Numbered from the stretch's first letter, positions 3,279-64,000 are shown. The stretch is DNA of 64,000 nucleotides from Phallusia mammillata (GCA_965637545.1 OZ281495.1:4340001-4404000), one strand, 5' to 3'. Made by a program: numbers and translations. Notes: generated from the sequence alone by a model not told the origin.

Positions 3279-3871
3279 TCAGTCAAATATGATCTGTTTA
3301 AACTCTCCAGGTTCCCAAGTACTTTCATTAACTTTGCTATGCGTAACCTGATCGGAATTTCTTGGACCCCAATACTTATCTTTTGCGTAGATAACTGTCC
3401 ATGTCACTGTTTCTACCAAATCTGTATCACATACTTGAACTAAATATAATACTCCTTGGTACTCTGTTGCCCAGGTTGTATCAGTAGGTGCAAAGTCGAA
3501 AGAACCACAATTGCACCCTGCAAAAGTGTTATGGTAGTTTTTTCATTCCATGTTTTTTATTCACGACGTACAAGTCACATGACGAAAGGCAGTTTGGCAT
3601 AAATTTAACTTGATGACAAACGATTCTACTGAGTTAGTAACACGGGGGTATCAACAGAACCCAAGTTTTATTATAAAACAATCATTTCTCTATTGTGGTC
3701 TTTTGCAAAATATTACACGGTGATTTTTTGTGACAAATTGTCGAATTTAAATTGTTACTTTTTTTGTTGTTTTTGCTTGACATCACACAATCAAGTTATA
3801 CGTAGCAACTTACCTAAGCTTGTAACCGTTCCACACCAAACAATGACAAAAATAAAGCACAATTCAATCAT
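3279..3871 (-). pseudogene. Inverted truncated receptor-family copy: signal peptide plus partial N-terminal domain (about 98 aa; pseudogene or short secreted form)
   Basis: Minus exon 3871-3814 encodes MIELCFIFVIVWCGTVTSL followed by GTAAGT. Exon from 3517 (TTTTGCAG acceptor) encodes GCNCGSFDFAPTDTTWATEYQGVLYLVQVCDTDLVETVTWTVIYAKDKYWGPRNSDQ...FKQIIFD*, clearly homologous to exon 2 of genes A/B/E. No downstream family exons found. Confidence 0.8.
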
Positions 3872-5809
3872 GTTAATCTATCTATTTCAACAGAAAGAGA
3901 TTCAGTTTAAACGATCACTAGCAAAAAGTTAAAAAGACATTTGTTTGCTTAAATTCGATCACATCAAAATTTTCCGAAAATTGCAAACAAACAACAATTA
4001 GGTTTACAGCCAAGTAGACTTGAATACAATAAAATTAGCAAGTCAAAAAAGGAGTGAGCACAAAAACATTAGATTTAGGCACTATATCTCTGAATGCTAA
4101 TGTATGGTTAAATTATTTTTTAAACATATCAAACAAAAACCAAGAAAAATTTTGACTGTTCTGCAGATATTGCGAATGCATATAAAATAAGCCACATCTA
4201 GCGTTGCTGTGGTTCTATGTCCATCCGAATCTCTTGAGGTTTGCTTATATGCAATTGTGATTTAAACGGGAAAAAAATAATAAAACGCTTTCATATTTTT
4301 ATTGACCAGAGTAAACCGAAAACTGAATGTTGTGTAAATACCTTTGTAAGAAAGAAAATCCTGAATGGATTTTTTGGTCGATTTGGAATATCCATGCTAT
4401 ACGGCAGGGTTGGGTTATGCATGTGTCTTTGCCCTTAATCTGCTGCTTTCGAGAACTTGAAAATAATTTAACATCGCATTATGCTTTGTAAACGATGTTC
4501 ACAAACCTGTAGAGTTAGCTGCAACTAGTATAAAAAATTTTATCAAGATCCGAATATACTTGTGAAGTAGATTGAAATAATAAATATTTAAAAACAAACA
4601 AGTGATTTTCAAACAATTGCTTTATGAGGTTTCACCTTTATATTTAATGTGCTGTTGCATATTTGTATCGAGTAAAATTATATCTCCATAAAAACAAGCG
4701 GACGAACTTGAACCGTAACAACTGGCATATTTTGACTGGTATATTTTGCCCGACCGTTTCTTGTCTAAAATGCGTAAGTGGAAAGTTACTGTGTTTGTTT
4801 GTTTTTGCCTGGTGATAATCACTTTCGCTGTGACAGTGACACAATACGGGCGAAATGCGTGTGAGAACAATGAAGTCGGGTTGACGAATTAAAAACTAAA
4901 AAGAAAACGTTTATATAAGGATATGGCTCATTCTTTATCACTTACAGCAGATTTTTTTCTGTCTAAGTATGCAATTGCTTCCTCGTATTTTTTCTATGCC
5001 TTGTGTTACTTTTGTCAGTGTGGTAATGGATGAAAAAAAAATTTTGCATCAAAATTATTGTCATTCTAATCTTTATGTGAAAGAAACGAAAGTCGATGTG
5101 GACTTTGTAGCGACAAATATTGCACTTTCAAACCTTTGTTTCTCTTTCGCTCAAATATGAGCAAATAAATTTCAACAAGGGCTGCATCGGCCATGTAGGC
5201 ACGTATAAATATTATAGATGATATCGTTTTATGTTCGAAACTTCTTGGCCTATTAGTTACCAATTATCTTCAAAGTTGCTTATGTGATCGGCGTAGCGGT
5301 TCCACATGACATTGTCACAGATTTCTTTACAGCCCTGTCGGTTCGAGTAGCAATGAAAATTCTCCACCAGTGATGTGACTATTACTCGATGTTTAATTCA
5401 ATGTTCATATTAAAGTCTTTGTCTCTCTCTCTAAATGTTTACCATGGAATTGTCCATGTAGGCACATATAAATATCAGATGTGATTGTAAACGATTTAAC
5501 GTCTTTTATAACGGCCTTTGACAATTCGTTTGTAAATAGCAGTCTGGTGTTTTGCTCACCTTACGATCGTCTAAAAACGTGTCCGAAACTCGCTTCTATT
5601 GTTTGTCTAAGGCCAAGCAAGCACGTAAACGCTTTAGTTTCATTTTACAACACCATTGTCAGTGGAAAATACTTCAATGTTCGAATGGGTTATATTCGAT
5701 AGCTTTTGGTATGTGGCTGTTCAGATACATGTTGCTGTAGCCAGCCAAACTGTGTTCATTGGTGATCTGATCAGGTTTTGAAAAAAACAATCACATCAGT
5801 TAGGCAAAC

Positions 5810-8800
5810 ATGAGATTGAGGGTTTCGTTAACGTTTTTATTGTGTGTTTTACTTAATGCGGAATTCACATTTTCAAGTAAGTTTGTGTTTTAACAATTTG
5901 TAATTTTATTTTCTCAAAAAAAAATATAGGCCTATATATATATATATATATACTTGTTGTTCGTTATCTACAGGTTGTAGTTGTGGCTCCTATAACTTTT
6001 TTCCAAACCATACGATTTGGGCTTCACAATTCGAAGGAATAATGTATACAGCCGAATTATGTGATGTTTATGGGGTAAAGTGGACAGTAAACTACCCGGA
6101 AAAGTATTGGGGTTCACGAAGCTTTGATCAAGCTACGTACAGTCAATCTAGTGGAACTTGGATAGCATTTAAATACACCGAATTCAATTCATCGTTGGTG
6201 ACAAATGGAAGTTGTATTGTAACAGCATTGGAAGTGACAATACCAATGAACCAGTCATTTGATGGCATAAATTTGCAGCTGACTTCTTATTGCCATTGGT
6301 GTACTTGTCGTAATAAAGATTTTGTAGTAAATATTCAAAGTATGTTAAAAATCATTTTTTGCATCCGTAAGCGGACTTTAAATATCGAAACTATTACAGA
6401 TTGCAATCAAACACTGCCGGATGACGTAGTGGTGACATCATCATCTGGTTACGATTTTAACTCATCTGGAAACTTTTGTTGTCCGAACGACAAAAAACTT
6501 TTTTATTCCAACGCCATGGAATTGAATGATAATGAAACTGTTTGCTTACAATCAGCCCAATGGTTGGCTCAGGATGGACTACAATGCTGGAGTGGTATGG
6601 GTTAAGTTTTATATTTTCACAGTACCCAAAATTGAGCGCAAACCAAACTTTTCAAATTATAAATATAAAAATACATATGATTTTATATGATCCGGAAGCA
6701 CAAGTATGGGATTCCGAACACTAATACTTCGCCACACTTGTGCTTTGCCTTTCCCTTTTTTGATTACCTTTTATTCTTAGTTTATGTCAGTATTTGCATC
6801 ATTTTCAGAACCAAACGTTACGTTACAACACAATTTAACATCCTGCAATGTGGTTAACGCAACAGTGAGCTTTTCATGTTTGTACGATAACGCATTGCCA
6901 CAAGGAAATATGTCAAGTTTCGTCATTGATAGCAAAGTTCACAATGTTATAAAAGTTGAGTAACAATAAGCTTTTCATAAAGTGAATGTTTATTTGGTAA
7001 TAGACATTGTTTAGGTTTGCAATGTTATATTTATCTTTAAGGGCAAACCTTATTTACTACATCTTCAACAACAACAAAATGGTTCAAAAATATTTTGTCA
7101 AGCTCAAACACCTTTTACAGGAATATATTCAGAAACTGGAAAATCTGATATCATCACCATCAATGTATTTTGTAAGTTGAAATTAAGCATTTTTCTATTG
7201 CATTGTTTTGACTTTGCCAACACCTCTTTAGCACAACCTGGAAACGTGAAAGCAACAGTTCAAACTTCGGATAAAGTAATAAAGTCTGGAGCAACAATAT
7301 TTCTTAATTCAAATCAAATCGTCTCGCTTTATTGCACAAGCGACATGAATTTCGCCCCTTGCGAATGGAAATTTAATGAAACTAAGTTTTCTAAATCATG
7401 TGACGTCAGTCAACACTTGAACCAATCAGGATTTGTCTCGTGTAGTGTTTCAAATTGTGCTGGATTCAAAGAAAGTGAAAGATACGAAATAATTGTGGTA
7501 GAACCAAGTGAGTAGTGTAATTTTTAAGTGATATGTAATCTGAATACGATGTAACAAAATATTTACTACAGGAACAGCAAAAATTATTCAAACAGACCCT
7601 TCAATTACTAAAGGACAAACGTTGATGTTAATTTGTGAGATTGATTACCAAAATGAACTTAACACAACCTTTCATTGGATCACTCCACCGAACGTTATTC
7701 CCTCCAGTGGTTCAACTTTACATGTGCAGAATATTACGCGATTTGAAGGCGGAAATTACTCTTGTACAACAAGTGACTTATTTCAAACTTCCTATATTGA
7801 TATTCGCATTGACGTTCTATGTGAGTCGATTTAGAACATCTTAAAGCTAGCTGTAGCTTTGTGTTATCTACTTCCGTTTTAACATTAAACAAGATTTGAC
7901 TGGCGAAATTACACTTGCATTGATGACATTAAATTTGGTATCACGCAAAGCACGGTGTTTGTGGATGTTTTATGTAAGTGTGGAAAAATCGTAACAGGCA
8001 CTGTAGCGTAATTATGAACTATTTTTGGTTTTAGTTCAACCAGTATCAGATTACAGCAGCACTGTTGAATGCACTCCTAATGATGTAGTGAACGGAACTT
8101 GCATATTTCAATTTTCATCCAATCCTTCGCCTAACAGCTGGACATTAACTGCTAATGGTAAAAATGCGAAGTTCTTAAAGTGCCCACAGTTGATTTCAAC
8201 TTATTTTGCAGGCAAGGGAGTTTATTGTCCAGATTGTTACATTACTCACCACAATTTACAACAAACGTTTTACTTCTTGGTGGTACGTGAAATTAAACAT
8301 GCAAAGTTCACATTTTTGGTTTTCTGTAGTAAAATCAGATAGATCTCAACGAATGTTTTTCTTTTGTTTTCATAACTTTGCTCTTCGCTTTTCATTTGCA
8401 GCCAACATCTATAACTGAGGAATACGAACTCATTCTTAGATCGAGTTTATTTCCTCATGCACCACTCACTGTTTATATCTACCTCACTTTTATTGACCCT
8501 ATTCCACCAGACGACACGAATGATGATCAAACAGTTATAATAGCTGCAAGTGTTGTTGGGGGCATTGTTCTTGTTGCCATGGTGATTGCAGTCGTATTTT
8601 TCTATCGACGAAATTACATTCAGAAAAGATCAGGTTGGGACAAATTTATTTCTGATTGTTCGTGGAATGACCATAAACTTTTATTGCTATCATTGAGTTT
8701 TGTTTTTGGCCCCGTTTGCTCTTTGAATGGACGGATGTTGTTAAGTAGTACGATTTGTTAGATATAGGCGACCAATGGACGCTGTGGGTGTTATTTTCGT

Positions 8801-9323
8801 TTTTTGTTGACTCGACAAATTTATTTTTGTTTGGCGACGTGATAGCCATAAGCTTCTGTTGTTATTATGAATTTTCTTTAAAATACAAGAATGTGGAAAC
8901 CGAATCCCTTTGCCAGTCTTTACTTTTGCTTTTGTCGACTGAGGTTAATCCGTTCCCGATGCTTTGCAATTAAATTTTTAGGGAAAAGCACCAAACAAGA
9001 AGACTTATACATGAACACGTCAGCAGATGGAAAGCAACAAGATGCAAAACATAATACAGAGTTTGCGATGCCAGAAAACCATTACGAAGAGGTAGACAAT
9101 ACTGTCTATGAAAACGATGGTAGGTTATGTTAGAAAATAAATTATGATAAACATATACTTCTTTAAGCTGTAATTATGGTTTTACAGTCGATAAAGCCAC
9201 CTCAAACTATGAAACTGTGTCATCGAATATCAAAGAAGAACACACATACGGTTTGACAAAACCTCACACATTTTGTCTTTAATTTCTAACACTTTGAATT
9301 GTTTTACAGCTACTGATATCTGA
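5810..9323 (+). CDS. Receptor A: type-I membrane protein, SP + N-terminal domain + sushi + 3 Ig + membrane-proximal domain + TM + tyrosine-motif tail (about 689 aa)
   Basis: 13 phase-consistent GT-AG exons: 5810-5876, 5974-6339, 6400-6594, 6809-6954, 7042-7171, 7232-7507, 7572-7820, 8035-8157, 8212-8282, 8402-8633, 8982-9119, 9188-9250, 9310-9323. Sushi ends TVCLQSAQWLAQDGLQCW. Ig F-strand motifs include GGNYSC. TM is VIIAASVVGGIVLVAMVIAVVFFY followed by RR. Tail has LYMN, HYEEV, VYEN, SNYETV and HTYATDI*. Confidence 0.85.
5933..5952. repeat. (TA)n microsatellite in intron 1 of gene A
   Basis: Run of TATATATA... directly visible. Confidence 0.9.
7885..7974 (+). pseudogene. Remnant 3' half of an Ig exon inside an intron of gene A
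   Basis: Translates TRFDWRNYTCIDDIKFGITQSTVFVDVL followed by GTAAGT. It matches the end of the last Ig exon of E (27217-27480) but has no 5' half or acceptor. Confidence 0.75.
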
Positions 9324-10492
9324 GGCCAGAATCACTTTCTAAACCAATTCGACGGTCAAGTTACATTGTTACACTTTTCAACACAAAAATTCACTGTTTG
9401 TTTAATCTGATTTTGACTTTTGATTGGTAGAGTAGCTGTTTATTGTTTATGATTTTTCATCGGATGCATGATTTCCTACATTTAATTGCTATTGTGTGTG
9501 TGCAATTGCCAACCAAGCCGTTTGTTTAAACCTCGAAATAAATTCACAAAGTTTTATAACCCTTTGTGCAAACATTTACAATCTGGCTGCACTGCGGAGG
9601 TTTCCTTACAGTTATTGGTCACTGATATTTCCCGTCATATTCTGTTTTTAGCCGTTTTTAGATGCTAATTTAAATTTCTGCACCTTCTTATTTTGTAACA
9701 AGACGTTTATTATCTTGATTTATCTTGATGTTTTTGCAATTCCAGTCTACACATTGTGAATATGGAGTCGAAGTTGAATGCAATTGATTCGACAATCTAC
9801 AATTTTTGTTGTATTTTATTTTGCATTTATTAGCCACAAGGTATCGCACCGAAACACGTTTCTAAATATTAAACTCACAAACTGACTGTTCTACATTTTT
9901 TCGTGTAATTTCCAGTGTACCCATTTACATTCTGTTTGTTTGCCAGAGGTTTCATGACAATACGTGGTCACTGATATTACTTAATTATTGATTTTTTCCT
10001 TATATTTTACGACGATAACTTACTTGACTGCGTCGATTGCATGTTAAAACAGAACAAAACTTTTCCATCTTGGTCTTTGAATGACAATAATCGTAACATC
10101 AATTGTATTTCGTAAAAAAAGGAGTTTGAAAATGGTTGCCATTGCAAAAATTATAAAACAAACAAATAAATGTTTTTCTCATTGCCAAATTTGGCTCATC
10201 GAGTGTTTTTTTGGCTCATCGAGACATTGCTCGTAATATGTGTTTGCATGCAAATGCAATATTTCCACAAGATTTATTGCATACAATAACAAAATAAATT
10301 TGCACACTTATAAAGTGCCGGTGAATAGCAACAACATCGGTATGGCATTATTGTTAGACCCATCTACGTTTATTATGCTGAAACCAATGCTGATGAACAC
10401 ATAATGTTAAGGCTTCGCAAACGCGGAACGGGGTTCAGCGCGTTTTAACAATTAATGTAGAGTTTAGAGTAAAATGTCCTAAGCATCTACTC

Positions 10493-10651
10493 CACGGGTC
10501 GGCAACGTTTTAGGCGACCCGTGCTAATTTTCTTGTTATTTATATGTGGAAATGGCCTCTCGTGCCACCGTTTTTCTGAATAATAGTGGTTCGTGCCAGT
10601 AGATATCAATAATAAAGAGAAAGCATGGTTGCCAAGGGTTGCCGACCCCTG
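10493..10651. mobile_element. hAT-type MITE (about 159 bp)
   Basis: TIRs CACGGGTCGGCAAC ... GTTGCCGACCCCTG. Flanked by a near-perfect 8-bp TSD, ATCTACTC / ATATACTC. Confidence 0.8.
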
Positions 10652-10664
10652 ATATACTCAATGT

Positions 10665-11200
10665 GCGAAATAATTATGATAAACATCTTCTTAAAGGTTT
10701 TATGCTGGATTATGGTTTTTGTAGTCCATCAAACAAATTCAAACTATGAAATTGTGTCTTCGCACATCAAAACAGAAAACACATAGGCTACGGTTGGTAA
10801 ATACCAAACTTTTTTTTATTGTTTGATTTTCTGATGGTTCATATTGTTTTACAGCAACTGACATCTGATGGCACTATTAAATTTAAAACCAACCCATTTG
10901 TATAGTCCTAAACTAGATTCTTACATTTTACAACACAACAATTATGACTGTCTCAAATTTACTGTCTGCGTTTTTGTGTCGTTTTTGCTTTCGTTGAAAG
11001 AATCGATCGTTGTGTTATTGTAAAGTATGCATGTTAATAAACTGCCTGATTTCCCATGTTTCATGGCAATGAATAATTATCTTCGTTTTTGGTGCAATTA
11101 CCATCTGTTCAGATCTGGATATAAAACGCATTTCTTTATAGCCCACCTGTAATTCGTTGGGTAAACATTCAAAAGTTGTACGTTTTCGGTAGGTTTTATT
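10665..11200 (+). pseudogene. Orphan duplicated 3' end (last two tail exons plus 3' UTR) of a B-like receptor
   Basis: Exon from 10725 encodes VHQTNSNYEIVSSHIKTENT* (TAG at 10784). Terminal exon 10855-10868 encodes ATDI*. Downstream sequence matches B's 3' region near 15450-15720. No upstream exons found. Confidence 0.8.
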
Positions 11201-12060: not shown

Positions 12061-15000
12061 ATGACTTTTAAGTATTTGATTTTACTTTCTTTTTTCGTTT
12101 CACAGAGCGGGGAGTTTACGTATTTTGGTAAGTTGCGTTGTTTAAATTCATTAAATCTCTATTATGTCAATGTTAGAATTGTTTTTAAGGTTGCGGCTGT
12201 GGATACTTTTCCATCTCACCCTACAACACAACCTGGGCATCACATTACAAGGGAGTTTTGTACACATCCGAAATTTGTAATGCTGAGGCGGTGGGATGGT
12301 ATCTGACCTATCCAGAAAATGAATATTGGGGTTCACGAAGCCATGACTATGCTATGTATGACAATTTCACCGGTGACTGGGAACACGATGAGTTGAGCTA
12401 CATCGAATTTAATTCATCGTTGATGCAAAAACAAAATTGCATTGTCACAACATTAGAAGTAACAGTTTTATTAAATCAGTCTTTTGTCGGCATCAGAGTA
12501 TGGCTTGATTGGTTTTGCGTAAAGGATTATTGTTCCGTTGATGTTGCTCTAAAAATTCGAGGTAAATAAATCTTTTGTTTCTACAGCTGTTTAAAACAAC
12601 CAAATCTTGTTGCGTTTAGATTGCAGTTCGACTTTGCACAATGACGTCATAGTAACCGCATCTAGTTTTAATTTTAATCTATCTGGAAACTTCGGTTGTC
12701 AGAATGACGGAAAACTTTTCTATTCAAATGAAACACAATTGAAAAACACTGAAACAGTTTGTTTACAATCAGCTCTGTGGTGGGGTCAGGATGGATTGCA
12801 ATGCTGGAGAGGTTTGACTGAACTGTTTTAAGTGGTCGACATCAAAGTCCTTGCTCGAATATAATTTATTAACAGTATATTAACTTCAAAACGAAACGAA
12901 ATAGCATATATAACTTTTTTTGCTTTGTCATCTTCATGTAAATGGTTTCACGTCACAACATTGGATTATTTTTAGAACCTACAAATGTTACATTACAAGT
13001 CAAGTCAACAATGTGTAAAGCAGTTGGTGACACAATTACGTTGTCATGTTTGTACGATGACACATTGCCACAAGGAAACATGACAAACTTTTATATAGAT
13101 GGGGAAAAAACAACAGTTAAAAAGGTTGTCCATATTACTTACATATTTTGCACTAATAAATGCATTCAGACTGATACCTGTATGTTTGTAAGGGCGAGCC
13201 GTACTTGCTACATCTACAACAGCAACATGATGGAGCAGAGATATTTTGTCAAGCTGAAACACCTTTCACACACGTGTATTCAGAAACTGGAAGATCTGAT
13301 GTCATCACCATCAACGTATTTTGTAAGGTGCTGTCAAATATTTTTCCAAGCTTCCAATATTTAGAGTTTGCAGTTTTTTTGTAGCACAACCTGAAAATGT
13401 TCGAGTAACAATTGATACTTCGGATGACGTAATAAAGTCCGGCACAACAATATTTCTTAATTATTCTCAAAACGTTTCGCTTCATTGCACAAGCAACATA
13501 CACTCCGCTACTTGCCTTTGGAAACTCAATGAAACCATGCTTTCCAAGTCATGTGACACAACTCAATATTTCAACCAATCAGGGTTTGTCACCTGTCAAA
13601 TTTCAAATTGTGCTGGATCGCAGGAAAGTTCAAGAAAGCAAATAACTGTGGTGGATTCAAGTAAGTGTTTCATACATTTTTAGCGTTTTTGTCGCATTTT
13701 GGTGCTAGTAAATTCCCTTCATAGAAAGAAATGAAAGCTTCAAAACCTATATTTTTCAGGAATACCTATCATACAATCTAATTCAAACGACTTTCACCAA
13801 ATATTCCTGGGAGTTGATCTAACTTTGAACTGCAGTGTTTTGTATCAAAATGAGTTGAACACATCATTTTTGTGGGAAATCCCAGCAAAAGACAGAGAAC
13901 TTGACTTTTCAATGCCTATTCTCGAACTAAATAATTTGACAAGATTTGATTCGGGAAATTATTCTTGCATAACTTTTAATGGTTTTGGAGCTGCACAAAA
14001 CACGGTCTTCGTGGATGGTTTATGTAAGTATAAACGCCTTGTTTGCATAGGTTTTATGCGTTTTAACGAACTTGTGATTGGATTTTAGTTGCACCAGTTT
14101 CAGAGTATAGCAAAACCGTGAATTGCAGCCATGATGAAGTAGAAAACGGATTATGTGTGTTTCAATTTTTATCCAACCCTTTCGTAGACGCCTGGGCATT
14201 ATCCGCTAATGGTAAAAATTCCGACTTCAACCAGATGTATTCTTTTTTTACAACTTGTATTGAATTTTGTCACTTTTTGCAGAAACCTTCATTGACTGTT
14301 CTTTATGTTATATTGCTAAACAAGATGAGAGCAATTTGCAGACTTTTTATTTCATTATGGTACGTATTTTTTCTCATTACTTGTTTATAAGTTCTTTACA
14401 AATCAATTAGTTTGGTTCGAGCAAATTTCTGCCTTTACTTGCATGAATACAGTTTGTTTTTCGTATTTTATTTGCAGACGACTGAGCTGGATGAGAAGTA
14501 CGAACTCATTCTTAGATCGAGTTTATTTCCTGGTGAATCACTCATCGCTAATATCCACGTTACTTCAACTAATCCAACTCAACCAGAAACTTTTGACCAA
14601 ACAATCATAATAGTTTCATGTGTTGTTGGGAGCATTGTGTTCGTTGCCATTGTAATTGCGGTCGTATTTTTCTATCGGCGAAACTACATTCCGAAAAATT
14701 CAGGTTAGAACCGATTTGTTTTTTATTGTTAACGGAATGATCAATAATGTTACCATTATTATGAATTACATTCTGAGCTATATTTGCGCTTTAAAAGGGC
14801 GGATGTTTTGCGTGGTATGATTTATAAGATTTCGGAGAATAAATGACCCTGCTCGTGTTACTTTCATTATTTTGTTGACTGGACAAAATCTTTTTTGATT
14901 TTCGACGAAAATACCATTTATGACTAATATAATTCCCTTTCACATACAAGGATGGTGGTTACCAAGTGGCTCTGTTAGTTTTTACCATTACGTTTTTCAC

Positions 15001-15448
15001 AATAACCGTTGGTAATGTATTGTAACTAAACTTTTAGAAAAGACCACCAAACAAGATGTCGTATACTTGAACACCTTAACAGACGGCAAGCAACAAAGTA
15101 CTATAAATAAAATAGAGTTCACGACGCCAGAAAACCTTTATGAGGAAATAATCAATACCGCTTACCAAAACGATGGTGGGTAGAGCAAAATTATATAAAA
15201 TTATATTATATATTGTATTAAGCATCTACTTCGTGTTTTATTTTGTATTGTGGTTTTTGTAGTCAATCAAATGTTTTTAGCATCTTTTCAATGTTTTTTT
15301 AAGGGTTTGTAGTCGATCAAGCCAATTCAAACTATGTTGTGTCGTCGCACATCAAAACAGAAAACCCATACGGTTGGTGAATATTAAAACCTTTTTTTAT
15401 ATTTTTTTGTGTGATGTTTTATATTGTTTTACAGCAACTGGCATCTGA
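12061..15448 (+). CDS. Receptor B: type-I membrane protein, SP + N-terminal domain + sushi + 3 Ig + membrane-proximal domain + TM + tyrosine-motif tail (about 695 aa)
   Basis: 13 phase-consistent exons: 12061-12127, 12190-12561, 12620-12811, 12976-13124, 13193-13322, 13385-13660, 13760-14023, 14089-14211, 14283-14359, 14478-14703, 15038-15175, 15313-15372, 15435-15448. TM is IIIVSCVVGSIVFVAIVIAVVFFY followed by RR. Tail has VVYLN, NLYEEI, TAYQN, SNYVVS and PYATGI*. Confidence 0.85.
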
Positions 15449-47209: not shown

Positions 47210-48039
47210 TTTGGGTTTAAATGTTGCTTTTAGTTTAATTCAATATCATGTTTAAAGTAAAACATTTTGGGGTATTTTTTTAGTATTGCTAGCAGCTTAG
47301 TTTTAAAGTATATATTTTTACCCAAACAACCTCTGATAGGGAAAAGAATAAACATTTAAACTGAATGATCGCTGCTCTCCAATAAATCTAATTCCGTTGA
47401 TCCTTCCGGTAATAAATAAAGTGAGGGTAAAGTCCTTAAAATGACGGACAATAGTTTTCTTTTCAGATAAATTTTAGTTTTCGGGTGTGGTATACACTTA
47501 TAAAAGTTTAAAACACTGAAGTGTAGATCCAGAACAAAATGATCGTTAATAAATATCCACAGTGATAACGTGGGTTCTAGTAAGAGTGCGTTTAATACAT
47601 TCTCTTGAAATGCATCTCGTTAAAATACAAGTTTATCACCTCTTTTCCGTGCCTAATCTCATGCTGTCGAATGTTTGTAATCAATAAACAAAAATAGGTT
47701 AATTAGTTTTCCTCCATGATCAACGCAAACATTTTTGTAATTACTTTCTTTTCGTGTGTTTGCTTCGCCAATCAATTAACTTCACCACACGGCCGTGTCG
47801 CAAACGGTATCAGCATAATTGACAAAAAATGTATTTGTCAGGTGGATTGTCAACCCTCTTAAACGCATGGGTACAAATTAGCTGCTTAACACCCCCGCAA
47901 TTCTAAGGTTTTGCAGCCAATGTTAACAAGTAAGTTTAACGTGATTTTTTTGCTTTGTGTTGTAAAGCATGACAATTGTAAATATTATGTTTTCTAAGCG
48001 TGTAAAGTCGGAGCTTTTGAAATCATTTTGCAGGCTGAA

Positions 48040-52286: not shown

Positions 52287-55200
52287 ATGAATTTTTGCTT
52301 GACAATGTGTTTGGCTTTGTTGTTGTTCTGTTCGAAACCATGTACTGCTGGAGAAATCGTTATAGCAAGTGTGTTTCATATTTGAAACAATGTTGATAAA
52401 AATAGTGTTTTAGAATGACGGACTAAGAATTTTCTTTGTAGACTGTGATTGTTCATTGGTCAACTTCTCTCCAATGTACACAACGTGGGCATTACAATAC
52501 AAAGGAACTTTATACACAGCTCAATTGTGCGATATCACATCTGTGTCATGGACTATCAACTATCCAGATGGGAGCACCGAAGTGGCCGCATCTGTTTTGC
52601 TGCTAGACAATAGTTGGATTACGACCAGTTTATTTCCTTCAAGCTCATCATTTACCACAACACTAACTCAACAAACAAACAAATTGTATCAACACAACAT
52701 TGCAAGCCACAGATCCACTAAAATCATCTGCAAATGGAAGCAATTTTGAATTAGTTTCACTCTCAACATCTTCCGCTCAAGCATGCACCGCTAGCGAAAA
52801 CCTATACATCACAGGTAAACTTGTTCAATTTTAAATAAACTAACATTGTGCATTTTAAAACGTTATGCATACGTCAAAATAACCATATTGCAAAGGTTGC
52901 AGGCAAGCATTATTTGATAATGTAGTGGTTATTTCATCTGAAATAACGTACGATTCATCGGGAACGTTTGGTTGTTCAAGTGATGGAAAACTTTTCTACA
53001 CAAATGGGACAGAATTAACAAACAACGAAACAGTTTGTTTGAAATCAGCTCAATGGTTGGGCCAGACTGGATTACAATGCTGGGGAGGTATGTTGAATAA
53101 CTAGTAAGGTTTGTAGTAAAATATTAAACACGCTCCCATTCGATTTTGACATGTTGTTTAGCTCGTTTTGTTAAAACATAACTAAGGTTTTGCTACTAAT
53201 ATTTTGTTAACATTGATTAAGTAACAAGGTCATACTAACGGAGTAAAACGGCTGTTTTTCTGCTCCAGTTACTGTTATGTTGCACGAAAATTCCACTTCC
53301 TGTAATGTGGTTGGCGACACATTAAGCTTGTCATGTTTATACGATGACACATTGCCACAAGGAAATACGACAAAATTTTTTGTGGGATCAAACAGTTTTG
53401 TTGTTCTTAAGGTGCAAATTTTGAATTTTGGGCATCTTTGTATAAACGTCTTTTTCAAAAATCGTTCCTTTTTTAGGGCGACGTAGCTTATATTTTACTA
53501 CAAGAAGAACAAACTAGTTTGCAAATATTTTGCCAAGCTGTAACTCCTTACACTCAAATATACTCACAATATGGAAGATCGGATGTTATTACTATTGATG
53601 CGTTTTGTAAGTATTTATTCTGTTATTGATTCTCCGTTTATAAATGATAGTTGTTTTGTTTTTTTTAGCAAAACCCGAAAAGGCCGAAACTTCCATTGAA
53701 ACATCAAATGACGTCATAAAACATGGAACGACGTTCTTTCTTAATTCATTCCAAACTGTTCCGCTTCATTGCACAAGTGATATTGATTCATTTAATTGTG
53801 TTTGGAAATTTAACCAAACACATATTTCAGCCTCATGTGACACCACCCAATATTTCAACCAGTCAGGGTTCGTCACGTGTCATGTTTCAAACTGTGCTGG
53901 ATCAAAAACAAGCTTTTCCACGGAAATAGTTGTGGTACAATTAAGTATGTATTTGCAAGATGTGAATGTTATAAATTCGCTTTGATAATTGCGTACTATG
54001 ACTGGCGGTAGCTTATTTCGTGTAAGGTAGGTACCGGAAAAAGCTTAATACCAAAATTGCAAATCTAAATACAGTTTCTGTTAGGGTTAGAAAGCAGTAT
54101 AACAAAACGAAATGAACAAATTCCACGGAGGTCTTTCAAACTTCAATTACGAATATCTTGCCTGGCTATGTGAAATGTATTTACTTTTCTCACTTTTCGC
54201 CTTCAAGCCAAACTACTGGCATACGTATTTATGTGAAGCCACCTCTATAGATCGCCTGTAATATCAAGACTAAATCATTAGTTTGTTTAATTGTCACAAA
54301 AGTTAATATGCTATTTTTCAGGAAACGCATGTAAGTATAACGTAAGTTCTGCATAGGAATTGTGTGTACAAAACTTTAATGAACAGATTCGTTCAAACGT
54401 GTTTTTTTTCTGACCAACCTTATGATATAATTATCGTCCCACGTGTGTCAAGTGATATTGTTTACACCGGTTCACTGTTACTACTCAATGGGAATCAGGA
54501 TGTGAGGTTGTTTTGTGAGAGCTATGCCAATCCACAAGCCAACTGCGCATTTTACATCGGAAACGAAACTCCAACGTCATGCAGTATAAACCAGAATGTT
54601 AACACGGATCAATCAGTAGCATGTGTTGCTTCAAATGCTTATGGATATGGGAAATCCCCACCTATGCGACTTGTGGTTGAATAAATGATAGTATGCCTTC
54701 TCTTACCCTGGAAAGTAAAACAATTGACCAATATCATTCATATTTTTACAGAGATTTCCAATATACAACTTGATTCAAGTTGCAATGGACAAATTACAGC
54801 TGGCGATGACATAACTTTGAACTGCAGTGTACTTTACCATACTGAGCTAATGACGTCATTGCTTTGGGAAATTCCATCACATGACCGTGACGTCAATCTG
54901 AATACTGCGTTAGTAGAATTAAACAATTTGACCGGACTTGATTGGGGGAATCATTCATGCTAGCGATACATTTGGGAGAGCAACAAGTGCCCGTTTCATA
55001 GATGTTTGGTGTAAGTAAACATTAGTGACCACAGCAATACATTACTATGTGGCTGATAAGCTTTTATGGGTATTTTTTGCGGTTGCCCCAGTTTCACAAT
55101 TTAACAACTCTGTCAAGTTCAGTCATGATTATGTGGAAACCGGAACCTGTATGTTTCAATTTTCGTCCAATCCTTCGGCAGACTCATGGACGTTAACAGC

Positions 55201-55406
55201 TAATGGTAATTGTACTTTATGTTTTGCATTCTTTTGCGAACACGAAGTGTATTTGTTTCCCTGGTGAGCTTTAACAATTTGTTTACTTTAATAAATACGA
55301 CAGCTTTTAAAATGTTTTTTTTTGTATTGTTGGTTCTGTAGTTTCATGTCCGTTCTGCAGCATTACCTTGGACAACAACATTTTCCAAACTTTTCACCTG
55401 AACATG
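52287..55406 (+). pseudogene. Receptor pseudogene H (F-like ectodomain, no TM exon found)
   Basis: Signal exon 52287-52368. Exon 2 (52442-52814, 373 nt) is frameshifted by an extra ACAA repeat unit near 52675. Sushi, Ig2 and Ig3 are intact. Ig4 is collapsed. The Ig5 acceptor is AG>TG and there is TAA at 54682. TAG at 54961 in Ig6. Homology ends after the MITE near 55700. Confidence 0.85.
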
Positions 55407-59254: not shown

Positions 59255-61870
59255 GGTGTTCTTCCAGTGTCAATGTTGCAGCAACCACAAGCGGATTTTC
59301 TGCATTTACTGAATCACAAGTGTTTCTGCAACATGATCGAAATGTGACAATCAATTGTTATCCCGATGTTGCAAATCCCAAAGCAACAATACCGATGCGG
59401 TTTCTTGTTCCAACACCATTTATTTCAATGAAACATCCACTGCTAATTGCATTGTGAGTAACAAAGTCGGATATGCAAGCAGCGAAACTTTGGATGTTGT
59501 TGTCATATATAAAAGTATGGTATGCATTTAGTTTTTTCTCATTACCGTCATACTTTTACAACTAATCTACATGTACAGGAAATTCCAGCCTTTAAACACT
59601 CGAACAGCCGCACGTCCATGAACAACCTGGAATTTCATACCTCAAGGTCGCTGACTAATCTACAGGCAAACGTAAACAAGGAACTCGTTTATGTTGACAA
59701 TCGGATGCGCCACAATAAACTATCGCTTAATACGAGTAAAACAACGTATTTACTGTTTTGTCCAACCAAGCGCTCAAACACGCAGAAGTTTTCGACTTTC
59801 GTAGGATCGCAGCAAATACAGCAATCAACAGAAACGAAATACCTTGGAGTTAATATCGACGATCAGTTAAAATGGGAGAAACACATAGCCCATGTGGAAC
59901 GAAAACTGGCAAAAGCCTGCAGTATTATGTTCTGCGTGACTACTTTGGACAACAGTTTCTCCGTATTATTTACTACTCTCTTGCGTACCGCTATCTGCAA
60001 TATGCCGTCGCGGCGTGGGGTAGCGGAGACGCTGCATCAATTAAAACGCTTAACATCAAACATAATAAAATTTTGCGAGCTATTACTCGCAGCCCCTACC
60101 GATGTCGCGCTACTCCACTATATCACGACTTGCGTCTTTTAAAATTCAAAGACATTTACAAACTTGAGGTAGCCAAACTATTACATGCGTTTCGTACTGG
60201 TACACTACCTTCCACATACAACTCCCTGTTCACACCCATTGCGTCAGTGCACCACTACAACACCAGAAGGGCTGAAAACCAGAACTACTTTCATCCACGC
60301 GTAAACACCGCGTTCGGCACAAGATCAATTTGTCATCGTGGTCCAAAAGTATGGGAAGAATTACCACACGATATCAAGTTTCTGTCACGCTCGTCCTCTT
60401 TCAAAAAACAGCTGCGCTTACATTTATTAAAGAAATATGACCCCTCAACAATTAATTCACTTCCGGGTCCTCGCTTATACCATGCAGAATACACATAACA
60501 GAGCTTGTTCTCCTATGTCATAACTACCCTAGTTTTCACTTTTTTTGTGTGTGTTTCAGTTTTATCTTAGTGTGATTTTAATTTTAATTTTTTTTTATTC
60601 TATACTATTATATCATTAAACTGGATAACTTGGTCACATACAAAAGAACAAAATACTGCCGTAGGTTTCGTTTTTTTTTTCAGTTCGGCCATCCGAGTCC
60701 AAGACAGTGCAGCACCTTCCCCAGCGAACAACATCTGAGATGTCGTCATCGATCTTACAAAAGCAGAGGAGGAGATGCTCGACGGCAACATTCCCGTCGT
60801 AGCAACAAACTGTCCTCGGGACACCCGGGTCTGCCTACGGGATCACAGGAAACGTTCCGAGGAACCGAGCTGGTGTTTCCGTTTAGGCGGGTTTCATACG
60901 GCCAGCAGAAACTGCGGGTTCAACTACCGTCTTATGCAGCCGGACGTACCCCGCCAAGCTTGTGCTGTCGGTTGTGATCCTACGGCAGAACATACCTACA
61001 ACGGAATTCAACCACAATTCAAATAACAGGACACATGACTCGATAACCTACGGTTTTTTCGGTGTCCTTGCTGTTTACGTATCCGTTCAACAATGGAACT
61101 GTGATGATGATGAAGTGACTATGCAAATAAATTTGATTTGACTTGTGCTATACCCAACTTACGAATTGTGGATCTCAACAGTCCAACTTTGTTTTTATCT
61201 AGTTTGACAAGATTTGATTTAGGAGATTATGCTAGTCATACACAAAACCAGTTTGGAAACGACACAAATACGTTGTGTTTGAACGTGACATGTAACAACT
61301 GTATTCCCAGAACGGCTGCCTTTTTTGCTTGGGACGGTGTTTATTGCATTGGTGGTTTTTGTCTGAAGAAAGCGCTCTTTTAGGCAACGGGTCAATTTTT
61401 TTCTAAATTCACTTAGTCATGTGAAAAAGAAAAAAAATCCTGAATCAGTTTGCTGTTTCTTCAAAGCATATTGTTTAAGGTATGACATTCGCAGGATACA
61501 AACAAAATACTCAAGCTACTTACGCTAATTCTGTAGAAGCTTTGAGGAATGACGAGGATCATAGCAGCGACCGAACTGACCAAATCACTGTACATTATTA
61601 TCGTAAAAACTATTTCTACTAACAAAACATCTTCTTGAATATTCAGTTGCCTTTGCTTGTTTTATTTCAGAAACAGAAATAAGCAATTGTTTCGCATTGC
61701 ATAAACCGTTTAACAGTCACGAGTATTCGGAATTAGGTTAAATGAACAAGAGCCGGACAGGTAAATTCACAGAAAAATGTTTGCTTTTGGTTATTATTTC
61801 GTGTCAATTGATTATTAGGTGCTTATGAAACAACTATTTTAGAGAAAACCTTACCAACGTACAAAAATTA
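59255..61870 (+). pseudogene. Decayed receptor I: Ig exons and tyrosine-motif tail exons interrupted by a LINE
   Basis: Frameshifted Ig5-like exon at about 59255-59510 (VTINC..ANPKA / TANCIVSNKVGYASS). Ig6-like remnant at about 61140-61291 (SSLTRFDLGDYASHTQNQFG). Candidate tail exons at 61495 (ATYANSV), 61671 (HEYSELG*) and 61820 (AYETT). No TM exon found. Confidence 0.55.
59560..60600 (+). mobile_element. 5'-truncated CR1/L2-type LINE (C-terminal reverse transcriptase region, frameshifted)
   Basis: ORFs 59522-60142 and 59872-60498 encode NKLSLNTSKT...KYLGVNIDDQLKWEKHI and IYYSL..RYLQYAVAAWG...LYHDLRLLKFKDIY, typical of CR1/L2-clade ORF2 ends. A T-rich 3' region follows. Confidence 0.85.
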
Positions 61871-62922
61871 GACAAATCATGACAAATATTTTATGAAATT
61901 GTTTTATGAATGAAATTGTACGTTTTCAACGTGATGGACAATATCTTTGCTTCCGCAAAAAATCTGTGTTGTTTGTTATTTCATATAAAAAACACACAAA
62001 AAACAATGAATTTATGAGATTTGTAATTAGCAGATAATATAGAACACAAAAAGTAATGTAATTGATATAACTGTAGCCAACAACAGTGTCACATACGTTT
62101 GGTATATATTTGTTGCCACTCAAACTGATTTTTCAACAAAGCTTATTTGACCATTTTATCCGTATTATTTATAATCGGTACAAGCACATATACCGATTAT
62201 AACCTTAGTTAATAACGTTCTAAACATACATAACTTCAGCTAAATTAATCTTAGTCATTTGTGTGAAAAACAATTTCATGAAACTCATGATATACAAATA
62301 AAATCAACTGATACTTTAGGTACTGCGTGAAAGCATAACATGGGTAAAATGAACCTATAGTTAGGAAATAAAAAGTGTTAGGACCTTCACAAACTAACCG
62401 AAATAACTTTTAACTTGCCATTACTATTTTTAGTTGGAAAGTGACAGTATAGTAGAATGAGACCTGACATTAAGTTTTCCAGGTGATGCACACAGACAAA
62501 GCAAAAGATGCCGAAACTAAAAAATTTTGCTCAAATTTTCCAATCCACCGGCATTTGCGAACACAAAAATTACAAAATTTGTTTATACACAGCTAACCGG
62601 CGTTTAGTGCTCAGTTAATCACGACGACAGAAAAATTCTAGACAGATTTAGCGCAATCTAATGTACATGCACTTAAGCATATTAATGTGCTTACTTTTAT
62701 TTTACTTTTGTTTTAATTTGGCTAAATCAACTATTCCCAACTAATACATATGCGGGCTGATAGCAAACACTACTTTGCAAATCTATACATATATTTAAAT
62801 ATGTGCGACATGCGATGTCAGAGAGAAATCGTACAGCTGTTATAATTGAAGAACTTAAAACAAAATTTGGGTAACAATTTAAACATTTTATTTCCATTTA
62901 ACAATAAAATTTGGGTCTAATT

Positions 62923-64000
62923 CTAAGTCTCTAACTCTATGTCTGTTTTAACTGGCTCATCAGAACAGGGGCAACAGCAGCAGCAGCAGCAACAACACTT
63001 GAGGTGCTTCATGATAAAATCAATAACAGCTTTGATTCCTGCCAAACACAAATATTACAAAAATATTTTTGTTCTAAAAAATATTTTTATGCGCAAAAAT
63101 GTTTGTAATTGATTTTTATTTTCGAAAATAGTAATGATTTTTGCTTACCACTCCAAATGGCCATCAAACATTTTTTTATAGCCTCCCAAATGCATTTCCA
63201 ATTCCAGAAATGACCGGTAAAACAGCCAACAATAAATAAACCGACTATCAGTATCGCCCAGAGCCAGTCTGGTAAAGCTGTAAACGATAAAAACATTGAC
63301 AACAGCTCTATGCAAAGTTCGTTGAACTGGCACAATGTAAATTCTTACCTGAGCAGTTCTTACATGTTGACACTTTACCAGAAGTGCAATAAGAAGAGAC
63401 AACAACTATACCTTCCTTCTGACATCTCGCCACAGCAAACCCGTTACATCCGACGGGACAAGTCAAATTCACCAACTCATTGTATTGAATTGTAGCTGGA
63501 CTGTTGTCATATTTACAATCCTCTTCACAATCACTTTTACATGGTAAATATTCATTCAAGTAACAAACCACTGCAAAATAGAATCAGGGCATTAAAAAAA
63601 TCGTTTTGTCAATAAACCAAAGAATACGGAAAAACAAAGAGTGTGTACCATTTAATTATAACATGCAGAAGTTCGCTCTAGGCATGAGCTGTCCTTAATT
63701 TATTGTGAATGTTGTTGTTTTTTCCGCTAGTGAAACACATAACTGACATCATTACACAATTAACAAAAAACGAAATATTCGTTTCAAATTATACAATATG
63801 GACACAACAATCGATGCGAAAGTCGCATTTTCTCTCTGCATTATGTATGAAATGCAACCAAGGGCGATTTGTTCACTTGTGTAACGTCACCTGGTTGGCA
63901 AGGGTTCGTGACGTTCAACAACTTGTTGGCTCCACAAACAGCTGTAGAATTTCCACTGCAACCATCAGGACAAGTCATATTGATACTTTCTCCAAACCGT
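62923..64000 (-). CDS. Gene J (partial, runs off window): paralog of D with sushi-like repeats, one TM and a poly-cysteine tail
   Basis: Minus exons: beyond 64000-63891 (INMTCPDGCSGNSTAVC), 63570-63379 or 63349 (VNLTCPVGCNGFAVARC, matching D's VDLTCPTGCNGIVRATC), 63277-63149 (TM WLWAILIVGLFIVGCFTGHFW) and 63038-62923 (GIKAVIDFIMKHLKCCCCCCCCCPCSDEPVKTDIELET*). All exons are phase 1. Confidence 0.8.

What the first reader, a model, noticed from the sequence alone, without database searches (positions are those of the whole stretch)
3279..64000. Candidate paired-receptor immune/allorecognition cluster: sushi+Ig signalling receptors next to tail-less multi-sushi partners
Seen in sequence: about nine copies or fragments of a sushi+Ig type-I receptor with tyrosine-motif tails, interleaved with opposite-strand single-TM multi-sushi genes (D, J) whose tails lack such motifs. 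Established knowledge: Botryllus schlosseri fester/uncle fester are sushi-domain allorecognition membrane proteins, and a linked co-receptor family carrying ITIM/hemITAM motifs has been reported. Inference: this is a related or convergent system in which a recognition chain pairs with a signalling chain. Both TM types have small-xxx-small motifs (SVVGG in A/E/F; GLVVG in D; GCFTG in J) compatible with helix pairing.
Basis: partly seen in the sequence, partly recalled or inferred. Interest (0 to 1): 0.92.

Follow-up and report, generated by a model that had tools for sequence, protein, structure and literature searches.

The report
FcoR-like receptor cluster with sushi neighbours
This sea-squirt DNA holds part of a fast-evolving cluster of cell-surface receptor genes laid out like the 'fester co-receptors' of the colonial sea squirt Botryllus. 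Two small sushi-domain membrane genes lie between them, one directly head-to-head with a receptor, but nothing yet shows that the two kinds of protein work as pairs.

Summary
On the + strand there are six multi-exon copies of one type I receptor and three fragments. A, B, E and F look intact. C and G carry frameshifts or lack exons.

Each copy is built as signal peptide, variable beta-sandwich N-domain, one sushi-like module, 3-5 Ig domains, a small juxtamembrane domain, one TM and a tyrosine-motif tail. There are two tail types:
- **E type:** repeated NPxY plus acidic-YAxV cassettes.
- **A/B/C/F type:** YxN, YEE[IV] and [S/P]xYE[TI][VL].

On the - strand, D and J are real genes. They have phase-1 CCP exons, one TM and tyrosine-free tails, and a profile of their modules hits complement receptor 1 at E 5e-12.

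The receptor layout matches Botryllus FcoR (PMC12582321) with extra Ig domains. Relatives were found only in other ascidians (Clavelina, Phallusia), and they share the sushi module and the E-type tail cassette.

D and J do not fit the fester family. Only one TM was found, against three in FF. D has three CCPs against one in FF. An N-terminal Ig-like domain is not shown. Pairing of D/J with the receptors is untested. The small-xxx-small TM motifs do not discriminate. No D/J-type module lies beside five related loci from other assemblies.

The scan already reported an FcoR-like cluster 122 kb further on in this genome (s1-349154).

The parts
3282..3542 (-). Orphan inverted fragment: receptor N-domain exon only
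   Evidence: tblastn 32-47% identity to the N-domain exons of A, B, E and G; aligned in A1/A6; scores E 1e-33 with the N-domain HMM
5810..10783 (+). Receptor A, apparently intact: SP 5810-5876, N-domain 5974-6338, sushi 6399-6590, Ig1 6814-7185, Ig2 7234-7503, Ig3 7574-7819, juxtamembrane 8037-8156, TM 8420-8635, tail exons 8960-9121, 9151-9279 and 10616-10783 (DLYMNT, NHYEEV, TVYEND, SNYETV, SNYEIV)
12061..15377 (+). Receptor B, apparently intact: SP 12061-12127, N-domain, sushi 12619-12816, Ig1, Ig2, one Ig of the Ig5 type, juxtamembrane, TM 14496-14705, tail 15016-15180 and 15303-15377 (VVYLNT, NLYEEI, TAYQND, SNYVVS)
16604..19650 (+). Receptor C, probably a pseudogene: frameshift in the N-domain exon (16731-16847 against 16837-17091), truncated sushi, frameshift in the Ig5-type exon (18172-18351 against 18356-18427), TM 19191-19382, tail piece with VVYVNT
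20750..23051 (-). Gene D: SP exon 23051-22991, possible extra exons 22934-22812/22764 and 22444-22331, CCP1 21952-21791, CCP2 21683-21528, CCP3 21377-21201, TM exon 20850-20750 with a four-residue tail (KLDV; a GTAAGT donor overlaps the stop codon)
   Evidence: Pfam Sushi on CCP1; profile of the modules hits CR1/Crry/factor H; phase-1 splice sites; SP; exon paths
23052..24426 (.). About 1.4 kb between the divergent start codons of D and E (a possible shared promoter region; this is inferred)
   Evidence: positions of the SP exons
24427..30159 (+). Receptor E, intact: SP 24427-24490/96, N-domain 24876-25247, sushi 25313-25507, split Ig1 25740-26129, Ig2 26174-26449, Ig3 26515-26763, Ig4 26864-27157, Ig5 27217-27480, split juxtamembrane domain 27551-27821, TM 28111-28359, tail cassettes 28890-30127
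   Evidence: Pfam Ig_3 on 27219-27515
28890..30127 (+). E tail: seven short cassettes, mostly phase 1-1 exons. Four carry both NPxY/NPxH and an acidic YAxV (29356-29412, 29503-29559, 29879-29941, 30055-30111)
   Evidence: 54-58% identical to the repeated tail cassettes of Clavelina P0007/P0078 and 49% to Phallusia P0058
40582..45292 (+). Receptor F, apparently intact: divergent N-domain 40780-41165, sushi 41212-41412, Ig1-Ig5, juxtamembrane, TM 44551-44757, tail 45026-45172 and 45203-45292 (VIYINT, HIYVND, PKYETV)
48037..49372 (+). Partial duplicate of the 3' part of F: juxtamembrane piece, TM 48625-48831, tail (VIYINT, PKYEIL)
   Evidence: 74% identity to the F TM exon
52287..55406 (+). Receptor G, degenerate: frameshift in the N-domain exon near 52690, sushi 52898-53092, Ig1, Ig2, Ig4, partial Ig5, juxtamembrane; no Ig3 and no TM found; retroelement debris follows
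   Evidence: weak RVT_1 match at 59522-60142
61120..61287 (+). Isolated fragment of an Ig5-type exon
62923..64000 (-). Gene J, 3' part (its 5' end lies beyond the window): CCP from the window edge to 63891, CCP 63570-63349, TM 63277-63149, tail exon 63038-62923 with nine consecutive Cys and no Tyr
   Evidence: language-model neighbours are Sushi clusters at 0.90

Best explanation
The window is a stretch of a large, ascidian-restricted tandem cluster of IgSF type I receptors that evolves by gene birth and death. The cluster continues beyond both ends of the window.

**Receptor build.** Each receptor has a fast-diverging membrane-distal beta-sandwich domain (probably Ig-V-like), one conserved sushi-like module, three to five Ig domains, a small juxtamembrane domain, one TM and a modular tail of short phase-1 exons that carry tyrosine motifs. 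This is the layout of the Botryllus fester co-receptors (FcoR), with extra Ig domains.

**Inferred mechanism.** The variable distal domains bind a ligand on another cell or particle. Src-type kinases phosphorylate the tail tyrosines. The two tail types then recruit different partners. NPxY could bind PTB-domain adaptors and pYAxV could bind SH2 proteins in the E type. YxN (Grb2-like), YEE[IV] (Src-SH2-like) and [S/P]xYE[TI][VL] (ITIM/ITSM-like) occur in the A/B/C/F type. Copies with different tails would therefore give different signals.

**D and J.** These are real, mutually paralogous small membrane proteins made of CCP modules, with tyrosine-free tails. D is transcribed divergently from E across about 1.4 kb. 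What they do with respect to the receptors (partner chain, linked ligand or unrelated neighbour) is not settled by anything found here.
For: **Copies, domain maps and breaks:**

**Domains:** Ig domains by Pfam. Sushi-like module conserved in 32 sequences with invariant Cys and Trp. The only PDB profile hits are DAF CCPs, and they are weak. Pfam Sushi scores 19.2 bits in the homologue P0080.

**N-domain model:** pLDDT 80-92 over residues 20-90, all-beta. V-type Ig domains recur among the best fold matches, with VIA Z 5.0-6.5 for CD200RLa, CD96, TCR V, nectin, CD8 and MPZ, and Foldseek rows for nanobodies, CTLA-4 and UL141.

**Distribution:** only 73 hits in 1.84 billion representative proteins. 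All long true relatives come from Clavelina lepadiformis or Phallusia mammillata.

**Tails:**. The E cassette is conserved in Clavelina and Phallusia.

**FcoR description:** PMC12582321.

**D and J:**
Against: - No transcript evidence was obtained; four RNA-like runs gave only a short repeat.
- Sequence homology to the Botryllus FcoR proteins was not tested.
- The Ig-like assignment of the N-domain rests on middling scores. The best VIA match is a bacterial Csp protease beta-sandwich (Z 7.4). Foldseek's best E is 0.05, and atlas TM-scores stay below 0.41.
- The sushi part of the model was not confidently folded.
- The signalling roles of the motifs come from vertebrate SH2/PTB specificities, not from data on ascidians.
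Confidence: 0.6

Rival explanations
1. D and J are the recognition or partner chains of a two-chain receptor. Each forms a heterodimer in the membrane with the receptor encoded head-to-head beside it, as proposed for FF/FcoR pairs in Botryllus, and such pairs duplicate as units.
For: D and E are divergent neighbours about 1.4 kb apart. D and J are paralogues (36% identity over 44 residues). J lies at the window edge, pointing away from the window interior. Unchecked scan notes place the first domain of the next receptor 2.5 kb beyond the edge and an NPxY/YAxV tail 6 kb beyond it. If so, both sushi genes would sit beside E-type receptors. The tails of D and J have no tyrosine. The FF/FcoR precedent is in PMC12582321.
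Against: D lacks the FF architecture: only one TM was found and there are three CCPs. No charged TM residues or specific pairing motif were seen, and GxxxG-like motifs are common. A, B, C, F and G have no such neighbour. No D/J-type module lies within about 150 kb around five related loci. No co-expression or interaction data exist.
Confidence: 0.18
2. D and J are linked ligands or self-markers, not co-receptor chains. They would be surface CCP proteins recognised in trans or in cis by the neighbouring receptors, and kept in the same haplotype so that the specificities of ligand and receptor are inherited together.
For: Tight linkage and divergent orientation. D and J have diverged from each other: 23-36% identity between modules and unrelated tails. 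From general knowledge, allorecognition systems often link ligand and receptor, for example the fuhc locus (PMC12582321) and the Themis pairs and vCRL1 of Ciona (mentioned in PMC6916515).
Against: No polymorphism data were obtained. The only hint is that two runs of one study hold this stretch while other DNA runs under the same species label hold next to none of its words, which the tool itself says is no proof of absence.
Confidence: 0.12
3. D and J have nothing to do with the receptors. They are small CCP membrane proteins of the complement-regulator type (like CD46, CD55 or Crry), or of another role, that merely lie inside a receptor cluster that keeps rearranging.
For: The profile of the D/J modules hits CR1, Crry, factor H, C4BP and DAF. 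The build is short tandem CCPs plus a membrane anchor. No relation was found between the D/J CCPs and the receptor's own sushi module (hhalign probability 1.2%). D/J-type modules are absent beside the five related loci examined.
Against: Every CCP protein hits complement regulators, so this says little about function. Two paralogues both placed just upstream of receptor genes is somewhat more than chance would suggest, but the second case rests on unchecked notes.
Confidence: 0.3
4. The + strand family is a set of ordinary cell-adhesion IgSF molecules with no role in immunity or allorecognition.
For: Ig-rich ectodomains and NPxY motifs also occur in adhesion and endocytic receptors (general knowledge). 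No expression data were obtained here.
Against: The family is lineage-restricted (73 hits in 1.84 billion proteins). It forms a tandem expansion with pseudogenes and fragments. Its most variable domain is the distal one. It has two exchangeable tail types with ITIM-like and YxxV motifs. None of this is typical of conserved adhesion genes.
Confidence: 0.08

Closest known systems
Fester co-receptor (FcoR) family of Botryllus schlosseri (Rodriguez-Valbuena et al. 2025, PMC12582321)
   Same: Type I protein with the same order of parts: signal peptide, variable N-terminal beta-sandwich domain, a sushi domain in second place, Ig domains, one TM, and a tail with YxxV-type tyrosine motifs (both families have AYAxV-like strings). 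Both are large, divergent tandem families with partial copies, exchange of tails between ectodomain types, and a head-to-head tyrosine-free neighbour for some members. An unpaired FcoR-only cluster also exists in Botryllus (chromosome 9).
   Different: Three to five Ig domains after the sushi instead of two, plus an extra small juxtamembrane domain. The E-type tail is a repeated NPxY-YAxV cassette that the paper does not describe. The other tail type has YxN and YEE[IV]. The organism is not Botryllus by any evidence here; the nearest relatives found are in Clavelina and Phallusia. Sequence homology to FcoR was not tested.
Fester family (FF: fester, uncle fester) of Botryllus
   Same: D and J are tyrosine-free membrane proteins that contain sushi domains. 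D lies head-to-head with an FcoR-like gene.
   Different: FF has an N-terminal Ig-like domain, one sushi and three TM segments. D has three CCPs and one detected TM, and an N-terminal Ig-like domain is not shown. J has at least two CCPs, one TM and a tail with a nine-cysteine run.
Vertebrate membrane complement regulators and receptors built of CCP modules (CR1, Crry, CD46, CD55)
   Same: Tandem CCP modules followed by a membrane anchor; significant profile hits.
   Different: D/J modules have extra N-terminal cysteines (a CPxGCxG motif) and lack the conserved Trp. There are only two or three modules. No evidence of complement regulation.
Paired or multigene IgSF immune receptor clusters (KIR/LILR, teleost NITR/NILT, SIRP)
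   Same: Tandem birth-and-death family, variable distal domain, members with different tyrosine-motif tails. Clavelina relatives also include short tyrosine-free tails.
   Different: No charged TM residue that would recruit an ITAM adaptor. A sushi module sits in the ectodomain. No homology is implied.

Membership tests
FcoR (fester co-receptor) | Type I protein with signal peptide and a single TM | tested here: met
   SP exons with phase-1 donors join the N-domain exon in A, B, C, E and G. One hydrophobic TM exon was found in A, B, C, E and F. This is sequence inference without cDNA.
FcoR (fester co-receptor) | N-terminal Ig-like domain | tested here: inconclusive
   AF2 model of the N-domain has pLDDT 80-92 and is all-beta. 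V-type Ig domains recur among matches (VIA Z 5.0-6.5; Foldseek E 0.05-0.15). The top match is a bacterial beta-sandwich (Z 7.4), and all Z values are under 8. Phallusia homologue P0058 has a weak V-set hit in its first domain (20 bits).
FcoR (fester co-receptor) | Sushi domain as the second domain | tested here: inconclusive
   Four invariant Cys and a Trp in CCP spacing. The only PDB profile hits are DAF CCPs, at E about 2. Pfam Sushi scores 19.2 bits against a cut-off of 20.7 in P0080, and the window exons get no Pfam hit. This part of the model was not confidently folded.
FcoR (fester co-receptor) | Two further Ig domains before the TM | tested here: not met
   There are three to five Ig exon units plus a small split juxtamembrane domain. 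So there are more Ig domains than the number described for FcoR.
FcoR (fester co-receptor) | Tail with ITIM, hemITAM or core YxxI/L/V motifs | tested here: met
   E has EAYAKV, PYAQV, DAYAMV and TYATV after NPxY. A, B and F have SNYETV, SNYEIV (both fit the S/I/V/LxYxxI/V/L consensus), PKYETV, YEE[IV] and YxN.
FcoR (fester co-receptor) | Detectable sequence homology to the Botryllus FcoR proteins | not testable with these tools
   No FcoR sequence could be fetched. The papers hold no supplements as text, and two word-index searches returned only the query.
FF (fester family) | N-terminal Ig-like domain | tested here: inconclusive
   The D signal-peptide exon can join CCP1 directly, or through one to three extra exons coding about 40-95 residues of unknown fold. 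The long upstream ORF matches the receptor N-domain HMM only at chance level (E 5.5, rank 27 of 1598) and has no informative language-model neighbours.
FF (fester family) | One sushi domain | tested here: not met
   D has three CCP exons and J at least two.
FF (fester family) | Three transmembrane segments | tested here: not met
   One TM exon was found in D, with the stop four codons later, and one in J. A donor overlapping the D stop codon leaves a small doubt.
FF (fester family) | No tyrosine motifs; encoded head-to-head with an FcoR gene | tested here: met
   The tails of D and J lack Tyr. The start codons of D and E are divergent and about 1.4 kb apart. The partner of J lies outside the window.
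CCP/sushi superfamily (D and J) | CCP modules recognisable by profile | tested here: met
   Pfam Sushi 22.2 bits on D CCP1. The profile of five modules hits CR1 at 5.3e-12, Crry at 2.8e-7 and factor H at 1.1e-3.

The most novel reading that the evidence does not exclude
In this ascidian lineage the FcoR-like signalling receptors with NPxY-YAxV tails work with a different partner or ligand than in Botryllus. The partner would be a small CCP-only membrane protein (D/J type), encoded divergently from the receptor and duplicated together with it. That would mean FcoR-like chains are ancestral to ascidians and have been coupled to different linked surface proteins in different lineages, which would be a route by which allorecognition systems arise repeatedly. 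A speculative detail: D may encode its N-terminal region in several exons while the first domain of E is a single exon, which recalls the 3:1 exon rule of Botryllus pairs.
Probability: 0.15. Interest if true: 0.8.

Novelty: new variant of a known kind. Interest (0 to 1): 0.5.

Why it matters
The Botryllus paper states that allorecognition genes have no obvious homologues outside close relatives. A cluster with the same receptor layout exists here, and its conserved sushi module and tail cassette are shared with Clavelina and Phallusia. This suggests that the signalling half of the Botryllus system belongs to an older, ascidian-wide receptor family. If so, one can ask which part of an allorecognition system is old and which is newly recruited. 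The NPxY-YAxV cassette conserved across ascidian orders is a concrete signalling module to test. The D/E pair offers a simple test of whether linked tyrosine-free sushi proteins are partners, ligands or bystanders.

Tried and rejected
- **Word-index protein searches.** Searches with Phallusia P0027 and with an 11-sequence family alignment returned only the query. They say nothing about Botryllus relatives.
- **Reads.** Four RNA-like runs were laid on 20500-26500 at 85% likeness. Only a short repeat at 21076-21158 matched, with no transcripts or splice joints. That stretch was 6,001 letters, one over the advised 6,000; the tool accepted it.
- **Single-sequence AF2.** The N-domain plus sushi failed (pLDDT 35). 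The eight-row alignment folded the N-domain only.
- **D upstream ORF.** The idea that it is a homologue of the receptor N-domain came from a 26-column hhalign match (E 0.005, probability 7%). A control against all 1598 window ORFs showed it is at chance level.
- **Bacterial FG-GAP hit.** The N-domain hit to a bacterial FG-GAP/proprotein-convertase protein (P0067) was judged spurious.
- **D/J CCPs against the receptor sushi.** No relation was found.
- **D/J-type modules elsewhere.** None in five other loci.
- **Species.** No DNA similarity between the window and four Clavelina loci or one unnamed ENA locus. Best protein identity to Clavelina is about 60% in the sushi exon.
- **RNA genes.** Rfam and tRNA scans found nothing.
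- **Supplements.** No supplementary sequences are held for the two Botryllus papers.


Full report
**What the window is.** The window is AT-rich (about 35% G+C), has no N runs, and has the look of an intron-rich animal genome. I translated all six frames and compared every stop-to-stop ORF with the window. This shows one family of exons repeated along the + strand. Using the exon peptides of the best copy (E) as queries, the copies map as follows:
- **A (5810-10783):** N-domain, sushi-like module, Ig1, Ig2, Ig3, juxtamembrane domain, TM.
- **B (12061-15377):** N, sushi, Ig1, Ig2, one Ig of the Ig5 type, juxtamembrane, TM.
- **C (16604-19650):** a frameshift inside the N-domain exon, a truncated sushi and a frameshift in an Ig exon.
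- **E (24427-30159):** all parts, with five Ig units.
- **F (40582-45292):** the same five Ig units and a strongly divergent N-domain.
- **G (52287-55406):** a frameshift in the N-domain exon, no Ig3 and no TM, followed by retroelement debris.

Three fragments complete the count: an inverted N-domain exon (3282-3542), a duplicate of the juxtamembrane, TM and tail part of F (48037-49372), and an Ig piece (61120-61287). Four copies look intact and two look like pseudogenes.

**Receptor gene models.** Splice sites are canonical, and almost all ectodomain exons are phase 1. A short signal-peptide exon with a phase-1 donor lies about 100-450 bp upstream of the N-domain exon in A, B, C, E and G. It joins that exon just before a conserved CxC. 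The N-domain is a single exon in every copy.

**Domains.** Pfam recognises Ig domains (Ig_3, E 8e-9 on 27219-27515). It recognises neither the N-domain nor the receptor's sushi-like module. The sushi-like module nevertheless has the CCP pattern of four Cys with a Trp before the last one. It is the best-conserved part of the family: in an alignment of 32 sequences the Cys, the Trp and a LFYSNGT core are invariant or nearly so. A profile of it finds only DAF CCP modules in the PDB, at non-significant E values. A Clavelina homologue scores 19.2 bits on Pfam Sushi, just under the cut-off.

**N-domain fold.** Single-sequence AF2 failed. An eight-row alignment gave a confident all-beta model of residues 4-113 (pLDDT 80-92 in the core). 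Its fold matches are middling:
- The best VIA Z is 7.4, to a clostridial Csp protease beta-sandwich.
- Many V-type Ig domains follow at Z 5.0-6.5, including CD200RLa, CD96, TCR V, nectin-1, CD8, MPZ and JAML.
- Foldseek lists nanobodies, CTLA-4 and UL141 at E 0.05-0.15.
- The atlas search gave nothing above TM 0.41.

I read this as a beta-sandwich that may well be Ig-V-like. The strength of evidence is about that reported for the first domain of Botryllus FF and FcoR, but it is not proven.

**Variability.** The N-domain is the most variable part: 28-55% identity between copies, and F is not detectable with E as query. The sushi module and Ig1a are the most conserved, at 55-76%.

**Tails.** Every copy with a tail carries tyrosine motifs, in two unrelated tail types.
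- **E type.** About seven short cassettes, mostly phase 1-1 exons. Four hold NPxY (or NPxH) followed 12-15 residues later by an acidic YAxV.
- **A, B, C, F and the F duplicate.** A [VL]xYxNT motif in all five. A, B and F also have YxND. A and B have YEE[IV] (F has HEYPDD in that place). A, B, F and the F duplicate have [S/P]xYxx[VLS] strings (SNYETV, SNYEIV, SNYVVS, PKYETV, PKYEIL). For C only the first tail exon was found.

The E cassette is not private to this genome. It is 54-58% identical to the cassette repeated seven or more times in Clavelina P0007/P0078, and 49% identical to the C-terminus of Phallusia P0058.

**Relatives.** The A N-domain plus sushi was scored against 1.84 billion representative proteins and found only 73 hits. 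The true long relatives are all uncharacterised IgSF proteins of Clavelina lepadiformis, many on one 26.5-Mb chromosome, or of Phallusia mammillata, the latter named after Ciona loci. Three other long hits (a bacterial FG-GAP protein, an EF-hand protein and a HAMP-repeat protein) look spurious.

In Clavelina the family includes members with long tyrosine-rich tails and members with short tyrosine-free tails, none with a charged TM residue. The window shares no DNA similarity with four Clavelina loci or one unnamed ENA locus. Its best protein identity to them is about 60%. It therefore comes from some other ascidian, or from a part of such a genome that the collections do not hold. I cannot name the species.

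**Comparison with the literature.** The 2025 PNAS paper on Botryllus (PMC12582321) describes FcoR as a signal sequence, an N-terminal Ig domain, a sushi domain, two Ig domains, one TM and a tail with ITIM, hemITAM or core YxxV motifs. It describes FF (fester, uncle fester) as Ig plus sushi plus three TM with no tyrosine motif. The two are encoded head-to-head as cognate pairs. There is also an FcoR-only cluster, intergenic recombination of ectodomains and tails, and motif swapping by splicing.

The + strand family here has that FcoR order of parts, with more Ig domains. It shows the same family behaviour: pseudogenes, orphan cassettes and two tail types on related ectodomains. Another agent of this scan reached the same reading for a window 122 kb further on (s1-349154). 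This kind of cluster has therefore already been found in this genome.

**The - strand genes.** D and J are real.
- **D.** A good signal-peptide exon (23051-22991, phase-1 donor). Three CCP exons with strong phase-1 splice sites (21952-21791, 21683-21528, 21377-21201). A TM exon (20850-20750) that stops four codons after the helix. A GTAAGT donor overlaps the stop codon, so a further exon cannot be excluded.
- **J.** It runs off the window. Two CCP exons, a TM exon and a tail exon with nine consecutive cysteines and no tyrosine lie inside it.

One D module passes Pfam Sushi. A J module has Sushi clusters as its language-model neighbours. A profile of the five modules hits CR1 (5.3e-12), Crry, factor H, C4BP and DAF. 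The window holds no further modules of this type.

**Are D and J the 'FF' of this locus?**

*In favour:*
- They are tyrosine-free and contain sushi domains.
- D is divergent from E, with about 1.4 kb between start codons.
- D and J are paralogues.
- By unchecked notes of the scan, the gene just beyond J is another receptor with an E-type tail, and the next window holds further head-to-head pairs (s1-351808, s1-351753, s1-351703).

*Against:*
- D has three CCPs and one TM, not one sushi and three TM.
- An N-terminal Ig-like domain is not shown. The signal peptide can join CCP1 directly or through one to three small exons of unknown fold.
- A tempting 26-residue similarity between the long ORF upstream in D and the receptor N-domain turned out to be at chance level when all 1598 window ORFs were scored.
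- The D/J CCPs are unrelated to the receptor's own sushi module.
- A, B, C, F and G have no such neighbour.
- None of about 150 kb around five related loci holds a D/J-type module, and this includes the Clavelina receptor with the same tail cassette.
- Small-xxx-small motifs are too common in TM helices to count as evidence.

The pairing idea therefore stays a hypothesis. Rival roles for D and J are a linked ligand, or an unrelated complement-regulator-like protein.

**Expression and polymorphism.** Only two runs of one study hold the 6-kb D/E stretch. Other DNA-like runs under the same species label hold next to none of its 31-mers. That would fit strong haplotype or presence/absence variation, but the tool warns that it proves nothing, and I could not follow it up. 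Four RNA-like runs gave no transcript of D or E.

**Verdict.** The receptors are best filed as an FcoR-like family outside the botryllids, with differences in Ig number and tail cassettes. D and J are true CCP membrane genes, and their relation to the receptors is open.

Noticed in passing
window 141-1718 (+): A protein kinase gene in at least two ORF pieces (141-455 holds the glycine loop and VALK; 711-1718 holds HAD, DFG and APE). Its best solved relatives are RIPK2, TNNI3K and Eph kinases at E 6e-15 to 1e-12, so it is a TKL-type kinase. It lies just upstream of the receptor cluster.
   Followed up: partly
window 21076-21158: A short element inside an intron of D matches many contigs, some at high depth, in all four RNA-like runs at 85-95% likeness. 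It is probably a dispersed repeat or an abundant small RNA. Rfam and tRNA scans found nothing there.
   Followed up: partly
window 35267-38476 (-): A series of 70-100-codon open frames on the - strand between receptors E and F. Examples are 37183-37401, 36836-37075, 36570-36806 and 36171-36401. They have no Pfam or meaningful PDB match. This may be an unannotated gene or an element.
   Followed up: partly
window 56000-60500: Retroelement debris after the degenerate copy G. There are overlapping ORFs 59522-60142 and 59872-60498 with a weak RVT_1 match, and local repeats at 57425-58113 with an inverted match at 58984-59344.
   Followed up: no
window 47076-47252: A short tandem repeat that reads as about three copies of a 13-residue unit in all three frames. 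It lies between F and its partial duplicate.
   Followed up: no
window 62923-63038 (-): The tail exon of J encodes nine consecutive cysteines followed by PC, which looks like a palmitoylation cluster.
   Followed up: partly
Clavelina proteins P0001-P0086; loci L001-L003, L005: In Clavelina lepadiformis the same family has many members on one chromosome. These include tyrosine-free short-tail members (P0018, P0019, P0003, P0074) and a member with at least seven NPxY-YAxV cassettes (P0007/P0078). In L002 two family members lie head-to-head.
   Followed up: partly
window 32933-33028, 34897-35007, 50030-50215: Three copies of a short dispersed repeat, 50-57% identical at the protein level in several frames.
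   Followed up: no
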